Source: Asterias rubens (Eukaryota). From it: a stretch of 64,000 nucleotides of DNA. Each line of letters starts with the position of its first letter. Position 1 is the first letter of the stretch. Position numbers and translations under genes: made by a program. Positions 7,901 to 60,428 of the stretch are shown in pieces. The notes under the pieces are model-generated. The model searched no databases and was not told the DNA's origin. It saw only the letters and a list, made by a program, of their open reading frames with translations. Location of the stretch: positions 19,530,001 to 19,594,000 of the forward strand of contig NC_047068.1 in NCBI RefSeq assembly GCF_902459465.1, given 5' to 3'.

Positions 7901-10900
7901 TAAGAACATTTTGGCATTTCAAAAGAGTGCAGAGATGGTTGACTACTGCAATTTCGGGAGAATAACCATTTTCAAGAGCATGTGCAACCTGTGAAGTCTT
8001 TAGTCAAGGTATTTGTAACTGGCTTTGTATGCTGTCTTCTAATGCACTGGTTATACATTTGACCAAAAGAAGTCGTTAAAATTGTAATTTCAATGTGGTC
8101 TGCATTCGTGGCACTTTCGAGAAAATGTAAATGTTTAAACGGATGATCAGTTGGTTAAAACGGTATAACTGGAGCAGGCTTATCCCAACTGTTGGATTAG
8201 CCAAACTTTAGATTAAGTATCCGCCCAATTATAATTGAGACATACAGCATTAGAGAATGATTTCATGTCTGTGTTGTTAACTTGTTTGTTCAATATTTCA
8301 GGCTGATGTCATCATCTGGGACTTCAAGGAGAAAGAGCTCTACTGCCGTCTAGATCTACACAAGGTCAAAGTTCAATCACTAGCCTTCTCTCCAAGCTCC
8401 CGGTACCTGGTGTCGCTGGGTGGGCAAGACGATGGTAGTGTCGTCGTTTGGGACGTTGCGAAAAAGCAGTCGGTGTGTGGGTCACCAGCTGCCGTCATGA
8501 GCGCCGGGATGACATCTTGTATTGCCTACTGTAATAACGACGATCACCAGTTTGTCACAGCTGGAGAGTAAGTAATGTCTGTCTGTCTGTCTGAATCTTT
8601 GTACCTGAACAGGCCAAGTGCTTAAAGGAACACGTTGCCTTGGATCGGACGAGTTGGTCTATAAAAAGCGTTTGTAACCCTTTTTTATAAAATGCATATG
8701 GTTGGAAAGATGTTTTGAAAGTAGAATACAATGATCCACACAATTAGTTTGCCTCGAAATTGCGTGGTTTTCCTTTTACTGTGCTTTACTAACACGGTTG
8801 GCCATTTATGGGAGTCAAAAATTTTACTCCCATAAATAGCCGACCGTGTTAGTCGACGAGGTAAAAGGAAAACCGTGCAATTTCGAGGCATGTTTGTGTG
8901 GATCATTGTATTTCACTGGATCTGTCCTTTTAACCCACTCTAAAATGTAAAATGTTTATTTCTGTTAATATCACAGGCGTACCATCCGTGTGTGGACACT
9001 TGATGTGGCCAATCGTAAAATCCGTCCAGTTGACTGCAACATGGGGCAGCTCAAGCGTTATGTCAAGTGCATTGAGGTGTGTAGGTTTTGTTTTTACTAT
9101 ATATCCGCTTCACTAGTCAGAGTACATTTAAACACCAGTTCTGCCTAAAGCACGGCTCATACTGATTGCATTGAATAATGCGCAATGAATAATTCGCAAC
9201 AAAGAATTTGCAACAGTTAACTGTTAACAACATTCGCTGTGAAAACAGCCCTGTGATGTCAAAATTTTACTTAAAATTCACATTCACAGGAAGTAGAAAC
9301 CGGGACTAAGCTTAAAGACAGTGGTCACTATTGGTAATTGTCAAAGACCAGTCTTCACACTTGGTGTATCACAACAAATGCATAAAATAACAAACCTGTG
9401 AAAATTTGAGCTCAATTGGTCGTCGAAGTTGCGAGATAATAATGAAAGAAAAAAACACCCTTGTCACACGAAGTTGTGTGCATTCAGATGGTTGATTTCG
9501 AGACCTCAAATTCTAAATCTGAGGTCCCAAAATCAAATTCGTGAAAAATTACTTCTTTCTCGACAACTATGTCACTTCAGAGGGAGCCGTTTCTCAGAAT
9601 GTTTTATACTATCAACAACTCCCCATTACTCGTTACCAAGTAAGGTTTTATGCTAATAAATATTCTGAGTAATTACCAATAGTGTTCACTGCCTTTAAGT
9701 AGCACTTATTTAGCACTAGAAGATCAGGTAAAAGCTCCCAAGTAGCGTTATATAACATTCACTATTTACTGCATTTCAATTAAACACATCCCAACACATG
9801 GAAAGAAGACTTCATTCACTTAAATGTCATGTTCCCCACCTGAGAGTTAGTGAGAGTACAAACAAAGACCCTAACTTCTTGTTCATCTTGTTGCCGGTGT
9901 TGGGCGTAAAAGTGTTCTATGGGAAATCCCATGTATTGACCCCTTGCACGCACGTCACACGCAGTGACTGTGCCACGCTCACCATTTTGTGGTCAATAGA
10001 TTTACGTGTTAACGCCGCACCGCCTCAAATGCGGCCTTCACTGAATAAAGCACAGTGACATTGTCCACCAGTATGGCGCATCCAAGATTATTCTGATGAT
10101 GACGTCAGGTGAATCGGGTCAATACGAGAATGTCACAAAACAATCATGAAATGAATAATCTCAAAGCTAATAAATTTGTTGAATCTCTAAAGAATAACTT
10201 TTAAAGTGGGACATTTAATTATGCCTATCTTGCCCTTGTAGGTCTCCAACGACGATAAATACTTCTACTGTGGCACCACTAGCGGTGATGTTCTACAGAT
10301 TAATGTAAGCAGTAAGCTTCTGGGCATGTATGGTCCTGAGAAGGATAAATACAGCCAGGGTGTAACCTCCTTGGCACTGCTATGGACTGGGGAGATACTG
10401 GTGGGGGCTGGGGACGGCACTGTGGCTCTCGTCAAGGGAGACAAATTCAAGAAGATCAGGTAAGGGCTCCCAAAATGTTTTTAAACCATAACAAGTGTTA
10501 ACTCCATTGTATTCATAGTGTTCTTGGGCAGAATGGGTGTCTGTGGGTCTTTTGGACACCCTGTTTTTCTCCGAGAGATGAGTAGAGTATACTGTTGGAA
10601 ACGTTGAGACCAAACCGGCTCTTTTCAGAGCCAACACTCACTCATTAGAGATTTACACATGATTGTACCCGCAAGTTTACTATTTATTTATAGTTTCTTC
10701 TTATTTCTTCACACCATGCAAAGCTTCAAACAATATTTACCCTGTTTTTAATTCGGACACCCTATTTTTTCTTGTCATTTACATGTCAAATGTATTGCAG
10801 CTGAACAATTTGAAACCAAGTTTTTAAATTGCCAGCAAACTTTTATGAAATAATCTGCTTGTTAATTGAGTTTGCATGTTTTGATTGGTATGGTTGAATA

Positions 10901-13900
10901 AGAGCATTTTGAGCAGTTCATTTTGTGGCAACTAGGTCGTATCTCCTTTTAGCTGAAATACAAGTTTAGAATGTCTGTATCACGCTTAAAATAACTATGA
11001 TAAACAGAAAGTCAATGGATGTTAAGATATGATGTTGCACGGAGTGTTTTCGTGCAAGAATATCAGGCCTGATACTTCATGGAGGCAACAAAGGCGATTG
11101 CCTCTATGCCCTCTGGTCATACTTGTTTCCCTAGTAATGCTACAGTAGAAGATTACAATTTCCTCATAGGGTGCCCTTAAAGACACTGGACACTATTGGT
11201 AATTGTCAAAGACTAGCCTTCACAGTTGGTGTATCTCAACATATGCATAAAATAACAAACCTGTGGAAATTCCAGCTCAATAGGTCGTCGAAGTTTTGAA
11301 ATAATAATGATAGAAGAAAACACCATTTTGGCACCATGGTCACACGGAGATGTGCTTTCAGATGCTTGATTTCTAAATCTGAGGTCTCGAAATCAAATTT
11401 GTGGAAAATTACTTCTTTCTCGAAAACTACATTACTTCAGAGGGAGCCGTTTCCCACATTGTTTTATACATGTACTATCAACAGCTCTCCTTTTATGGTT
11501 TTATGCTCATAATTATTTTGAGTAATTACCAATAGTGTCCACTGCCTTTAACCAAAGACAAAATGCCTTGGTGCCCTTGCCCTTTCAAAAACGAAGCATA
11601 CAGCCCTGGAATATACCTCTTTGTTACAGAATTAAGAACTATGACCTTGTGGTACAGACACAATGAGTTACTCTGAGATAGAAATAGGTATGTTGTTCAA
11701 TAAAAGAAACTGTTTTTTCCCAATTTTTATTCAGGCATCGTAAATTGGCAGGATGTGGCACCATCTCATCTATTGCCTTGAGAGGAGCTGGACACCAGGT
11801 GGGTGTGGTCTAAGAAGAGATGGTGGGGGGGGGGGGGGTTACCTACCTGCAATATGGCAGACCAGGGCCCAATTTCACAGAGCTGCTTTAGCAGAAACTA
11901 TTTTAAACATTTTCTGCTTAGCACAATTGAGCAGGATACCAGTCAAAAATTGAAAACAAAAATTGTGTATCGCTATAAAAGCTAAAACTATTTTACAAGT
12001 TGTAATGAGTATTATTGTTGTTCAGATTTTGTCATTAAATCAAATTTAGAGCAAAGATTTGATTTCAAAAAGAATAAAGTTCTTTGTTTGACGTAAGTTC
12101 TCGTTCCGATAGTAGCCGCGAGACTTGCACTGATTATTAAAGTCAATCTTAGCTCTTTGTGCAATCAGCACTTGCAACAGAAACAAATGTCAATTGTTTA
12201 TATAACCAAAACTCATTAAAAGCCACAGACATTTTTGTTTTTGTTTTACCTTATGACATTGGCTGTTGTGTTGAATTGCAGTTCCTGGTTGGTACAGGGA
12301 AGTCCAAGATATATCGCTTCAACCTGGCCGACTTTGAAAACGAGATCATGAGAGATTGCCATTACAGCAGTGTTGAAGATATTGCCTTCCCTTAGTAAGT
12401 TTGAAATTCATGCTATCTCTCCATTAACCTAGGCTAGGGTAGGCTAGGCTAGGATATCCCATGATCTTCTCACCATGGGGGCACCCCTTGAAGACTTGTC
12501 AATCAGCTTCTTCCATCCTTCTCGATCCTCAGATTTTCTCAGGGAGTTAGGCCCTGCATCCACTCCATGATGTTGTCCTCTCTCCTTTATCTCTGCCTGC
12601 CTCTCTTTCTTCCTTCCTCTATGTACAATGCCTTGCAGGATCGTCTTAGCAAGTCCTGTTGATCAATAAATGTGCCTATACCTCTTTAGTTTAGGGTGGC
12701 ATGGTTGGCTTGTGCGTAAAGCACTCGCCTCTCACCAAGGTGACCCCGGTTCGATACCCGGCCAGGGCCGTATGTGAGTTGAGTTGTTTTCTGCTGTCCC
12801 ACAAGGGTTTTCCAGACTATCCGTTTTTTCTCCCTCAGGAAAAATCAGACACTTTTAATCTCTGGCTGTGCTCCGTGGTCATAATGGGTTGATGTGGTTG
12901 GCAGCCAAAGGCGCCCTTGCATATTGCCTGCTTCTCGAACACGTTGTAGCCGCATCCTTCGCAATTCAGCTCTTAGTTGCGAGTAAGAATGATTAGCCTC
13001 CCAAATTATTTAGTCTGCACTTTTTCAGTTTGATTGGCAAAATGCTTGCTATGGCGTCTCTTATGGCTGAGAATTAAAGCGCGCCGGACTCGAGCTCTTG
13101 TCCAACAGAACTACATTGTATTATCATTATTATTATTGCACCAAATTTATATTTTGTATTTATTCCTCACAGCGGTTTCTCAGATCTCTTTGCAACCTGT
13201 TCCCAGAATGATATCCGTGTGTGGAATGCCAAGAACTGTAAGGATCTACTCTCCATCACAGTGCCCAATATGACTTGTCATGCCATTGAGTTCACCAGAG
13301 ATGGCAGGAGTATTGTCAGTGGTAAGGCCCAAGTTAGGAGTGGACACATTTTGGACTGTTCTTGATACAATGCAGGCCTGGACTAGACCCTTCCTATGAA
13401 ACATGTGCTAACATTAACGCATGCGTACAGACCCTATTGGTTGGCAAATGCCATAGATGTGCATCAAGTAGATGCTTGTGACAAAGTAAGTTTTTATGCT
13501 AGCAGATATTTTGAATAATCACCAATAGTGTCCAGTGACTTTAATGTAAATTTCTTATTACTTCTAGCATGGGATGACAACAAGATTCGAGTGTTCTACC
13601 CGGAGTCAGGCAAGCTCATGTACCAGATCAATGATGCCCACAATAAGAAGGTGACCGCCATTACCACCACCTCGGACTGCAGCCGCATCATCAGCGGTGG
13701 CGGGGAGGGACAGGTCCGAGTCTGGGTGATCAGCAACATGAAGGCAACACTCAAAGAGGCCATGAAGGAACATAAGGCGGCAGTCACATGCATTGTGGTC
13801 AAGAAGAATGACAGCGAGTGCATTAGTGCCAGTGATGATGGCTCCTGCATCATCTGGGATCTTAAGTAAGTCATGGTAAAAAACAATCAAACATAAAGTG

Positions 13901-60388: not shown

Positions 60389-60428
60389 GGCTCTTTTCAG
60401 AGCCACCACAAAATCAAAAAAGAGAAAT
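60389..60428 (+). terminator. H4 3' stem-loop (60389-60404) and purine-rich HDE
   Basis: ggctct-tttc-agagcc-accac, then aaaaaagagaaat. Confidence 0.95.

What the first reader, a model, noticed from the sequence alone, without database searches (positions are those of the whole stretch)
10568..10730. Dispersed element coupling a hammerhead-ribozyme fold to a histone-mRNA 3' stem-loop and HDE-like motif
Seen: in CFAP52 intron 5, with no histone ORF nearby, lies the exact 16-nt histone stem-loop ggctct-tttc-agagcc (10617-10632) found after the H4 and H3 genes in this window. It has the same flanks (aacc / aacac) and an agaga motif 15 nt downstream, like the H4 HDE. Immediately upstream the sequence reads stem I tctc, core cgagaga (CUGANGA degenerated), t, stem II gagtag/ctgttg (5 of 6 pairs), GAAA, palindromic ACGU, predicted cleavage triplet GUU, stem I' gaga. 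Established: this layout (extra nucleotide after A9, palindromic minimal stem III that works as a dimer) is the minimal type-I hammerhead of Penelope-like element pseudo-LTRs, and histone stem-loops bind SLBP and direct U7 cleavage. Inference: this is the terminus of a retroelement family that self-cleaves and has co-opted histone 3'-end machinery, which could give S-phase or oocyte/embryo-coupled stability, export or translation without poly(A). I am not aware of this combination being described. This copy is probably catalytically dead.
Basis: partly seen in the sequence, partly recalled or inferred. Interest (0 to 1): 0.88.

Follow-up and report, generated by a model that had tools for sequence, protein, structure and literature searches.

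The report
Penelope retroelement end carrying histone stem-loop
The stretch is one dead 172-base copy of the end piece of a sea-star Penelope-like jumping gene, and that end piece holds a small hammerhead ribozyme followed directly by a faithful copy of the signal that normally ends histone messenger RNAs, a pairing not found in the searchable literature.

Summary
The exact 16-nt histone stem-loop lies at 10617-10632, with a degenerate hammerhead layout just upstream.

Window 10567-10739 is one copy of a dispersed retroposon, flanked by an 8-bp target duplication. The genome holds about 2,000 hammerhead halves and 1,165 exact stem-loops. Natural copies such as L008 have an intact minimal hammerhead (CUGAAGA, 6-bp helix II, GAAA, palindromic ACGU, GUC). 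The window copy has lost the core.

The family behaves like a Penelope-like element (PLE):
- variable target duplications and 5' truncation;
- an inverted partner copy in 11 of 29 loci;
- an optional 35-nt tail.

In a second sea-star-like host, and at five places in this genome, the module follows a PLE ORF (reverse-transcriptase C-terminal region plus GIY-YIG) by about 26 nt.

At least three diverged PLE lineages keep the stem-loop. One base pair changes on both sides (C-G to U-A). They also keep a purine box complementary to the genome's U7 candidate at histone-like spacing.

Function is unproven: RNA-seq shows no cleavage ends. The scan had already noted this family elsewhere in this genome.

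The parts
10559..10566 (+). left target-site duplication CCCTGTTT
   Evidence: Identical 8-mer at 10740-10747, directly flanking the element.
10567..10739 (+). one 173-bp copy of the PLE terminal module (short form). It starts at the family's commonest 5' end, TTCTCC, and ends with ...CAAACAATATTTA.
   Evidence: 88-94% identical to 40 scored copies out of 2,574 first-look candidates. Boundaries come from the 30-copy alignment.
10568..10609 (+). degenerate minimal hammerhead: helix I tctc/gaga, core CGAGAGA instead of CUGAAGA, helix II with G10.1-C11.1 broken, GAAA, ACGU, GUU
   Evidence: Compared with intact copies. The fold of natural copy L008:1501-1590 gives helices I and II plus the stem-loop as its minimum-energy structure, z -2.7.
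10617..10632 (+). histone-type stem-loop GGCUCU UUUC AGAGCC
   Evidence: Exact match. Rfam Histone3 31.1 bits over 10612-10657.
10647..10652 (+). HDE-like box AGAGAU (AAGAGAU in most copies of this genome, UCAAAAGAGAU in the other host)
   Evidence: Complementary to AUCUCUU(UUGA) of the U7 candidates L031/L032. GAGA lies at +15 to +19 after the stem in element copies, +16 to +19 in H3 and +18 to +21 in H4.
10705..10739 (+). 35-nt optional tail
   Evidence: Inverted partner copies end at element position about 135-137 in 7 of 11 composites. Several direct copies in the other host also stop there. This matches the PLE tail of PMC8557442 and PMC11167929.
10740..10747 (+). right target-site duplication CCCTGTTT
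   Evidence: See the left duplication.

Best explanation
SHOWN. Window 10567-10739 is a decayed, non-functional insertion of the terminal module (pseudo-LTR part) of a sea-star Penelope-like retrotransposon. It entered a CFAP52 intron by target-primed reverse transcription and left an 8-bp duplication. In intact copies the module reads, 5' to 3':
1. a minimal type-I hammerhead;
2. 7-13 nt of spacer;
3. a histone-type stem-loop;
4. about 10-12 nt of spacer;
5. a U7-complementary purine box;
6. about 50 nt;
7. a first end point, then a 35-nt tail.

In coding copies the module begins about 26 nt after the stop codon of the PLE ORF (RT C-terminal region plus GIY-YIG). The stem-loop then lies about 76 nt behind the stop, as in a histone mRNA. 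A homologous stem-loop module also lies just upstream of the ORF of a second PLE family.

INFERRED. The stem-loop plus box is kept by selection in the replicating lineages as a working histone-type signal. It would bind SLBP and probably recruit U7 snRNP. PLE transcripts, which have no poly(A) signal or tail in the genomic copies, would gain a histone-like 3' end or histone-like stability, export or translation. This would matter most where SLBP is plentiful (oocyte, early embryo, S phase). Read-through RNA reaching the tail would serve as the template for reverse transcription.

My odds: identity as a PLE terminal module about 0.9; stem-loop under selection as a hairpin about 0.7; a genuine SLBP/U7 substrate about 0.45.
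For: Family and insertion habit:
- 2,574 first-look candidates; 2,017 hammerhead 5' halves with at most 2 mismatches; 1,165 exact stem-loops; 323 copies with the strict CUGANGA..GAAA..stem-loop layout.
- Sharp 3' end, variable 5' ends, and target duplications of about 8-15 bp.
- 11 of 29 loci are composites of an inverted tail-less copy plus a direct copy with tail, inside one duplication. Examples: L006 GTCTTTTAG, L013 CTCTGTGGT, L030 AGACCTTATGC. These are the habits described for PLEs (PMC8557442, PMC11167929).

Hammerhead:
- All features of the published PLE min-HHR are present: an extra nucleotide after A9, G10.1-C11.1, long helix II, 4-bp helix I, palindromic ACGU (PMC4209133).
- The resident 921-aa PLE has the same architecture in its 3' UTR.

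Link to a PLE ORF:
- In L079, a 325-aa open frame with the RT C-terminal region and a GIY-YIG domain (Pfam 28.9 bits) stops 26 nt before the module.
- This genome holds ORF fragments 87-93% identical to it. Five of them end within about 30 nt of, or slightly overlap, a CAGTCCAGCA|TTCTCC junction. 550 junctions exist in all.

Selection on the hairpin:
- 34 modules from two hosts and at least three families were aligned.
- The third stem pair is C-G in 20, U-A in 11, U-G in 2 and never unpaired, although the search pattern allowed C-A.
- One helix II pair shows five pair types and is never unpaired.
- Covariation score 0.190 against 0.096 in shuffles, 0 of 500 shuffles as high.
- In a further species label, C53>T (24%) and its partner G64>A (25%) occur at equal depth.
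- The purine box keeps its distance from the stem while the spacer sequence changes.
- The box is complementary to 7 nt (this genome) or 10-11 nt (other host) of this genome's U7 candidate.
Against: - No RNA evidence of processing. In four raw-read RNA runs no position collects read ends. One run that looks stranded (from about six flank reads) covers both orientations equally. The RNA depth profile mirrors that of DNA contigs.
- Genomic copies decay neutrally. The stem-loop diverges 3.6% per non-CpG site against 4.5% overall.
- Rfam Histone3 scores are 21-32 bits, below the gathering score of 34. The 3' flank is AACAC, not ACCCA.
- A hammerhead between the ORF and the stem-loop would cut off the stem-loop if it were active.
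- The reverse-transcribed RNA must run about 100 nt past the stem-loop, so U7 cleavage cannot be obligatory.
- The stem-loop alignment was gathered with a pattern that fixed five of the six stem pairs.
- The double change may be only one or two evolutionary events.
- The U7 candidates score below Rfam's cut-off (28.6 and 27.1 bits), and the other host's U7 is unknown.
Confidence: 0.55

Rival explanations
1. Passenger relic. A PLE ancestor picked up about 45 nt of a histone gene's 3' flank (stem-loop plus HDE) by template switching or recombination. The piece has been carried along without any function, and its conservation only reflects the youth of the families.
For: - PLE reverse transcriptases are reported to retrotranspose host sequences in trans (PMC8557442).
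- Histone RNAs are very abundant in echinoderm oocytes (my own knowledge).
- Dispersed copies decay neutrally.
- There is no RNA sign of processing.
- The double change in the stem could be a single event.
Against: - The module is kept in at least three lineages whose neighbouring spacers differ and whose ORFs are only 37% identical over the best local match, an 87-residue stretch.
- The one variable stem pair is never unpaired in 33 distinct sequences.
- The purine box stays at constant distance and, in the other host, matches 10-11 nt of the U7 candidate, which is better than this genome's own H4 gene.
- A mature histone mRNA lacks the HDE, so the captured RNA would have to have been an unprocessed precursor.
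Confidence: 0.25
2. Element-specific hairpin. The hairpin is selected for a PLE task, such as recognition by the element's own RT/EN, helping two hammerheads fold as a dimer, or protecting the 5' end of the ribozyme-cleaved RNA. Its likeness to the histone stem-loop would have no functional meaning.
For: - The hairpin lies 7-13 nt after helix I of the hammerhead in every family.
- Covariation shows only that the stem matters, not who binds it.
- PLE min-HHRs are thought to need partners or cofactors (PMC4209133).
Against: - 16 of 16 identity with this genome's own H3/H4 stem-loops, plus the CC / A.CAC flanks.
- The variants seen (GGUUCU..AGAACC, loop UCUC) fit the histone stem-loop consensus as I recall it.
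- A U7-complementary box at histone spacing is not explained by this reading.
- The two other resident PLE 3' ends examined work without any such hairpin after the hammerhead.
Confidence: 0.15
3. Host use at this locus. The intronic copy acts on CFAP52, for example as a cryptic U7 or hammerhead cleavage site that truncates the pre-mRNA.
For: The stem-loop is exact and a 6-nt AGAGAU box remains at the right distance, on the sense strand of the gene.
Against: - The hammerhead core is destroyed.
- The copy is about 10% diverged from other copies, as expected for neutral decay.
- No read ends accumulate after the stem-loop when family reads are laid on a natural copy.
- One such copy per roughly 360 kb is expected from the 1,165 exact stem-loops, so its presence in a 64-kb window is unremarkable.
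Confidence: 0.03

Closest known systems
Minimal hammerhead ribozymes in the pseudo-LTRs of Penelope-like elements (Cervera & de la Pena 2014, PMC4209133)
   Same: Type-I layout, CUGANGA and GAAA boxes, an unpaired nucleotide between A9 and 10.1, G10.1-C11.1, long helix II (6 bp), short helix I (4 bp), palindromic two-pair helix III (ACGU), and a location in the PLE terminal repeat.
   Different: Here the ribozyme is followed within 7-13 nt by a histone-type stem-loop and a U7-complementary box. None of the PLE or hammerhead papers I opened contains the word 'histone' where I searched for it. No searchable paper combines 'Penelope-like' with 'histone stem-loop', SLBP, U7 or HDE terms.
Canonical EN+ Penelope-like elements (Penelope/Poseidon, Neptune, Nematis; Craig et al. 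2021 PMC8557442; Frangieh et al. 2024 PMC11167929)
   Same: An ORF with a C-terminal GIY-YIG domain, 5' truncation, partial tandem or inverted insertions, an optional 30-40-nt tail, and variable target duplications.
   Different: About three quarters of the copies in this genome (2,017 hammerhead halves against 550 junctions with the ORF-side sequence) start at or inside the hammerhead. They form a SINE-like population of roughly 170-bp units. I did not assign the clade.
Replication-dependent histone pre-mRNA 3' processing signal (Rfam RF00032; SLBP and U7 snRNP)
   Same: Same 6-bp stem and 4-nt loop as this genome's H3 and H4, similar flanks, a purine box complementary to the U7 5' region at the same distance, and a short distance (about 76 nt) from a stop codon in coding copies.
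   Different: It follows a retrotransposon ORF, not a histone ORF. It scores below Rfam's gathering score. The 3' flank is AACAC in family 1. Processing is not shown.
Metazoan non-LTR retrozymes (Cervera & de la Pena 2020 PMC7229834; Li et al. 2026 bioRxiv 10.64898/2026.07.22.740005)
   Same: Short non-coding units with type-I hammerheads, proposed to derive from PLE pseudo-LTRs and to be mobilised by PLEs.
   Different: Retrozymes are tandem repeats expressed as circular RNAs. This family is mostly dispersed single or head-to-head units bounded outside the ribozyme cleavage site, so uncleaved RNA was the template.

Membership tests
PLE minimal hammerhead (min-HHR) | Conserved core boxes CUGANGA and GAAA with an NUH cleavage triplet | tested here: met
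   Intact in natural copies such as L008 and in 323 strict genome matches. Not met in the window copy itself, which has CGAGAGA.
PLE minimal hammerhead (min-HHR) | Helix II with G10.1-C11.1, an unpaired nucleotide after A9, 4-5-bp helix I, and a palindromic minimal helix III | tested here: met
   C + GAGCAG/CUGUUC, UCUC/GAGA and ACGU. One helix II pair shows 5 pair types and is never unpaired in 33 sequences.
PLE minimal hammerhead (min-HHR) | Match to an Rfam hammerhead covariance model | tested here: not met
   No hammerhead family matches at E up to 1 on 16 loci or at E up to 10 on L008:1480-1600. The whole-genome RF00163 search scored only 73 candidates and found none. My guess is that the Rfam models expect a closed helix III; I did not check this.
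PLE minimal hammerhead (min-HHR) | Self-cleavage | not testable with these tools
   RNA-seq shows no ends at the predicted site. Published PLE min-HHRs cleave poorly in vitro (PMC4209133) and cleavage is not needed for insertion (PMC11167929).
Penelope-like element terminus (pseudo-LTR) | Contiguous with an ORF encoding a PLE-type RT and a GIY-YIG endonuclease | tested here: met
   The L079 ORF has GIY-YIG at 28.9 bits (cut-off 22.6) and an RT C-terminal region 37% identical to the 931-aa PLE. Its stop lies 26 nt before the module. Five places in this genome show the same order by coordinates. The RT core itself was not in the contigs I could read.
Penelope-like element terminus (pseudo-LTR) | Inverted 5'-truncated partner copy and an optional 30-40-nt tail at one end | tested here: met
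   11 of 29 loci are composites. Partner copies end at position about 135-137 of 172. The tail is 35 nt.
Penelope-like element terminus (pseudo-LTR) | Variable target-site duplications and 5' truncation (target-primed reverse transcription) | tested here: met
   Duplications of about 8-15 bp around single and composite insertions.
Histone 3' processing signal (RF00032) | 6-bp stem and 4-nt loop of the histone consensus | tested here: met
   16 of 16 identity with the H3 and H4 stem-loops of the window.
Histone 3' processing signal (RF00032) | Score at or above Rfam's gathering score (34 bits) | tested here: not met
   31.1 bits in the window copy and 20.7-32.3 in other copies. The two histone genes score 36.3 and 39.6.
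Histone 3' processing signal (RF00032) | Downstream element complementary to the U7 5' region at fixed distance | tested here: inconclusive
   6-7 nt in this genome and 10-11 nt in the other host, at histone-like spacing. The U7 candidates are below Rfam's cut-off. They do show the UCUUU box, a near-consensus Sm site and a compensated hairpin, as defined in PMC5054213.
Histone 3' processing signal (RF00032) | Lies behind a replication-dependent histone ORF | tested here: not met
   A PLE ORF or a target duplication lies upstream.
Histone 3' processing signal (RF00032) | SLBP binding and U7-dependent cleavage | not testable with these tools
   No read-end pile-up after the stem in four RNA runs. 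The libraries may not capture such RNAs.
Metazoan non-LTR retrozyme | Tandem head-to-tail units bounded by hammerhead cleavage sites and expressed as circular RNA | tested here: not met
   The copies studied are dispersed or head-to-head, and their ends lie outside the cleavage site. An earlier scan note reports a 75-nt tandem array elsewhere in the genome, which I did not examine.

The most novel reading that the evidence does not exclude
A clade of sea-star Penelope-like retrotransposons mimics histone mRNA.
- SLBP and U7 snRNP would process or bind its transcripts, giving poly(A)-less, stem-loop-ended RNA for making the RT/EN protein in oocytes, embryos or S-phase cells.
- Unprocessed read-through RNA would be copied into DNA.
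- As a side effect, more than a thousand dispersed stem-loop plus HDE copies, many in introns, could truncate host transcripts or compete for SLBP and U7.
Probability: 0.3. Interest if true: 0.8.

Novelty: new variant of a known kind. Interest (0 to 1): 0.62.

Why it matters
As far as I know, the histone stem-loop pathway is treated as nearly exclusive to replication-dependent histone mRNAs. How Penelope-like elements form RNA 3' ends, and what their hammerheads are for, are both open questions.

A retroelement clade that keeps a compensated histone stem-loop and a U7-complementary box beside its ribozyme offers:
- a concrete, testable link between a mobile element and the SLBP/U7 machinery;
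- a possible route to germline-timed or S-phase-timed expression;
- a natural set of more than 1,000 ectopic histone-type signals whose effect on host genes can be measured.

For the locus itself the result is ordinary. It is a dead intronic repeat copy.

Tried and rejected
Readings rejected:
- Retroposed histone 3' end. No histone sequence lies upstream in any of 29 loci. A hammerhead and then a target duplication or a PLE ORF lie there instead.
- SINE with a pol III head. There is no tRNA, 5S or 7SL match in Rfam. I did not run a dedicated tRNA scan.
- MITE or foldback DNA transposon, suggested by the head-to-head pairs. The arms are unequal (one lacks the 35-nt tail), single copies predominate, and target duplications vary in length.
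- L1-style twin priming. Both arms cover the same part of the element.

Searches that led nowhere:
- The tails of the two abundant resident PLEs (921-aa and 931-aa families) show no primary-sequence match to the 172-bp unit. The partner ORF was found only through the metagenome contigs.
- Whole-genome Rfam searches for hammerhead found nothing. The U7 search gave only sub-threshold candidates.
- RNA-seq for processing ends found none.
- Post-insertion selection on the stem-loop was not seen.
- The origin of assembly JACSEG01 is not mentioned in any searchable paper.

Limits:
The ORF-bearing copies of this genome could be placed only by coordinates.
- In one search I computed a majority-rule string of the 172-nt non-coding unit, solely to measure per-site divergence. 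It is not reproduced or used further here.
Full report
**1. The observation**

The 16-nt histone stem-loop GGCTCTTTTCAGAGCC is exact at 10617-10632 on the + strand. The only other window matches are the H4 and H3 3' ends at 60389 and 62887, and shuffles give none.

Rfam Histone3 scores 39.6 and 36.3 bits at the two histone genes. The intronic site scores 31.1 bits, just under the gathering score of 34.

AGAGA begins 15 nt after the stem. The exon that ends at 10460 matches CFAP52 (E 2.6e-10).

**2. It is one copy of a large repeat family**

A search of the window's own genome (417.6 Mb) with 10540-10740 gave 2,574 first-look candidates. The 40 that were scored are 88-94% identical.

Pattern counts over the whole genome:

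| Pattern | Count |
|---|---|
| Hammerhead 5' halves, at most 2 mismatches | 2,017 |
| Exact stem-loops | 1,165 |
| Strict CUGANGA..GAAA..exact stem-loop layout | 323 |

An alignment of 30 copies shows a sharp 3' end (...CAAACAATACTTA, no poly(A)). The commonest 5' end is TTCTCC, and other copies are truncated further in.

Target duplications of about 8-15 bp flank the copies. The window copy has CCCTGTTT at 10559-66 and 10740-47. None of 29 other loci has histone coding sequence upstream.

**3. Intact copies carry a complete minimal hammerhead**

Natural copies such as L008:1501-1672 read UCUC-CUGAAGA-C-GAGCAG-AGUAUA-CUGUUC-GAAA-CG-UC-GAGA.

- The CUGANGA and GAAA boxes are intact, and the triplet is GUC.
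- Helix II is 6 bp with G10.1-C11.1, with an extra nucleotide after A9.
- Helix I is 4 bp, and ACGU is palindromic.

These are the features that Cervera and de la Pena list for the minimal hammerheads of Penelope-like elements (PMC4209133).

The minimum-energy fold of L008:1501-1590 is exactly helix I, helix II and the histone hairpin (z -2.7).

No Rfam hammerhead model matches, so the assignment rests on the descriptor, the fold and covariation.

The window copy has lost U4, G5 and A6 of the core and also C11.1. Most differences among copies are CpG transitions.

**4. The family inserts like a Penelope-like element**

Eleven of 29 loci are composites: an inverted copy abuts the 5' end of the direct copy, and a single target duplication encloses both. 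Examples are L006 GTCTTTTAG, L013 CTCTGTGGT, L021 ACCATTACCT and L030 AGACCTTATGC.

The inverted arm ends at element position about 135-137 in 7 of 11 cases, so it lacks the last 35 nt. In the second host several direct copies also stop there.

An inverted 5'-truncated neighbour and an optional 30-40-nt tail at one end are described as PLE signatures (PMC8557442). The tail is explained by two internal start sites of the PLE reverse transcriptase (PMC11167929).

**5. The coding partner**

The two abundant resident PLEs are the 921-aa and 931-aa families, both with a C-terminal GIY-YIG domain. Neither shows a primary-sequence match to the unit. The 921-aa family does have a hammerhead of the same architecture in its 3' UTR.

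A scan of public metagenome contigs for CUGANGA..GAAA..GGYTCTTNTCAGARCC returned 43 loci. Twenty-eight of them, nearly all from one assembly (JACSEG01), are elements of this kind.

That assembly contains host DNA of another sea-star-like animal. A Dicer-like exon pair is 90% and 78% identical in protein to this genome.

In L079, a 325-aa open frame ends 26 nt before the hammerhead. The frame holds the C-terminal part of a PLE reverse transcriptase and a GIY-YIG domain (Pfam 28.9 bits, cut-off 22.6). L088, L090, L093, L095 and L108 share this upstream sequence for up to about 800 bp.

In the window's genome:
- ORF fragments 87-93% identical to L079's exist.
- 550 copies carry the upstream junction CAGTCCAGCA|TTCTCC.
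- Five of these junctions lie within about 30 nt of such an ORF end, or slightly overlap it.
- L020 also extends into this 3' UTR.

The 172-bp unit is therefore the terminal module of a PLE. Most copies are short forms that begin at the hammerhead. In coding copies the stem-loop starts about 76 nt after the stop codon.

**6. The stem-loop is kept across lineages**

The contigs hold at least two more families. Family 2 differs from family 1 in the spacers and in about a quarter of positions, yet it keeps the whole layout:

- Helix II changes G.U to U-A.
- The stem-loop changes its third pair C-G to U-A (GGUUCU..AGAACC).
- The purine box AAAAGAGAU stays at +15 to +19 after the stem.

The window's genome also has family 2. 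L072 is a head-to-head composite with duplication CCAGTGTTTAT and a 3' flank ACCCCA. In addition, a homologous stem-loop module lies 13 nt before the open frame of the 931-aa PLE. That PLE's protein is only 37% identical to L079's over the best local match.

I aligned 34 modules and counted pairs:

| Measure | Result |
|---|---|
| Cells forming a standard pair | 95.3% (90.4% in shuffles; 27-40% with slid partners) |
| Covariation score | 0.190 observed, 0.096 shuffled, 0 of 500 shuffles as high |
| Third stem-loop pair | C-G 20, U-A 11, U-G 2, unpaired 0 |
| One helix II pair | five pair types, never unpaired |

Caveats apply. The search pattern fixed the other five stem-loop pairs. The sequences are related, so the double change may be one or two events.

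Independent hints come from laid contigs. In one further species label, C53>T (24%) and its partner G64>A (25%) occur at equal depth. The family is present in thousands of contigs in four other coded organisms.

**7. The U7 match**

Two sub-threshold U7 candidates lie 6 kb apart (28.6 and 27.1 bits). They read ...UUAUCUCUUUUGAAUUUCUCAAG followed by a hairpin with compensating differences.

They have the UCUUU box, a near-consensus Sm site and the gene clustering described for U7 (PMC5054213).

Pairing with the AUCUCUU(UUGA) tract of this U7 candidate:

| Sequence | Box | Pairing |
|---|---|---|
| H4 (window) | AAAAGAGA | 8 nt |
| H3 (window) | AAAAGGGAU | 9 nt with one wobble |
| Element, this genome | AAGAGAU | 7 nt (6 in the window copy) |
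| Element, other host (families 1 and 2) | UCAAAAGAGAU | 11 nt, if that host's U7 is the same |

**8. What is not shown**

Four raw-read RNA runs cover the family at a few hundred to about 1,200-fold per orientation. The orientations are equal, including in a run that looks stranded from about six flank reads. No position collects read ends, and the depth profile resembles that of DNA contigs. This fits passive transcription of scattered copies and gives no support for ribozyme or U7 cleavage. These libraries may miss short or non-polyadenylated RNAs.

Dispersed copies decay neutrally: the stem-loop diverges 3.6% per non-CpG site against 4.5% overall. That is expected for dead copies.

Because the inserted unit contains the whole hammerhead and runs about 100 nt beyond the stem-loop, the RNA that was copied was cleaved at neither site. 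This agrees with the report that unprocessed RNA is the substrate of a PLE enzyme in vitro (PMC11167929).

**9. Reading**

What is shown is a PLE terminal module that joins a minimal hammerhead to a histone-type stem-loop and a U7-complementary box. It is conserved with compensation across PLE lineages and at least two hosts.

The most likely function, by inference, is histone-mRNA mimicry for 3'-end formation, stability or translation of a poly(A)-less element RNA. The rivals are a neutral captured relic, or a hairpin with an element-specific role.

**10. Prior knowledge**

Hammerheads in PLE pseudo-LTRs, PLE insertion habits and PLE-derived non-autonomous units are all known. No searchable paper links PLEs or hammerhead retroelements with the histone stem-loop, SLBP or U7.

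The scan itself had flagged this family on other DNA of the same genome. One follow-up called it a PLE tail carrying a perfect histone stem-loop. My tests agree and add the ORF link, the tail, the compensatory change and the U7 match.

Noticed in passing
window ~9312-9700 and ~11177-11551: Two copies of another abundant repeat of about 390 bp lie in the same CFAP52 intron. Copies occur in most of the 30 fetched loci.
   Followed up: no
L008:1726-1772 (runs on beyond the stretch): A neighbouring repeat is represented at 16,000-28,000-fold depth in four RNA runs, against roughly 170-1,200 for the element.
   Followed up: no
L067:905-1010 (G000:C6:5698404-5698509): The 5' region of a 931-aa PLE is homologous to the stem-loop module. 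It reads TTCTCC, then a hammerhead that is mostly deleted, then GGTTCTTCTCAGAACC with flank ACCCC, a TTTAGAT box and TGGTGTTACCGC. It ends 13 nt before the open frame. The module therefore seems to flank PLE ORFs on both sides, as a pseudo-LTR would.
   Followed up: partly
L067:4040-4113: The 3' end of the 931-aa PLE (two copies 99.6% alike, ORF intact) has a hammerhead-like fold with a non-canonical core, UCGAGAA in place of CUGANGA. The GAAACGUC that follows is identical to the studied family.
   Followed up: no
L062 reverse strand 2290-2740: The 921-aa PLE family has a canonical min-HHR about 500 nt after its stop, followed by a 24-bp tandem array. It has no stem-loop.
   Followed up: no
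L072:3440-3640: A head-to-head composite of a family-2 element in this genome. Its stem-loop is GGTTCTTTTCAGAACC with the histone-like flank ACCCCA, and its target duplication is CCAGTGTTTAT.
   Followed up: partly
G000:C2, e.g. 3383907-3384908, 4137382-4138384, 4936218-4937220: At seven or more loci an ORF fragment (74% identical to L079's, residues 34-204) lies inverted about 470-490 nt from a module junction, always at the same spacing. This looks like a higher-order repeat built from PLE parts.
   Followed up: no
L031 and L032 (G000:C17:9503699-9503755 and 9509743-9509797, minus strand): Two probable U7 snRNA genes 6 kb apart, below Rfam's gathering score. They have the UCUUU box, an Sm-like AUUUCUCAAG and a 3' hairpin with compensating differences.
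   Followed up: partly
L092:978-1075 (minus strand of the contig): A contig from another metagenome carries what looks like a genuine histone 3' end with the U-A variant stem-loop GGTTCTTTTCAGAACC and the box AAAAAGAGATTT. Some organisms therefore seem to use that variant in their own histone genes.
   Followed up: no
L005:1093-1225 and 2403-2535: Two copies of an H/ACA snoRNA-like sequence (SNORA42/SNORA15, 34-38 bits, below the gathering scores) flank one element copy.
   Followed up: no
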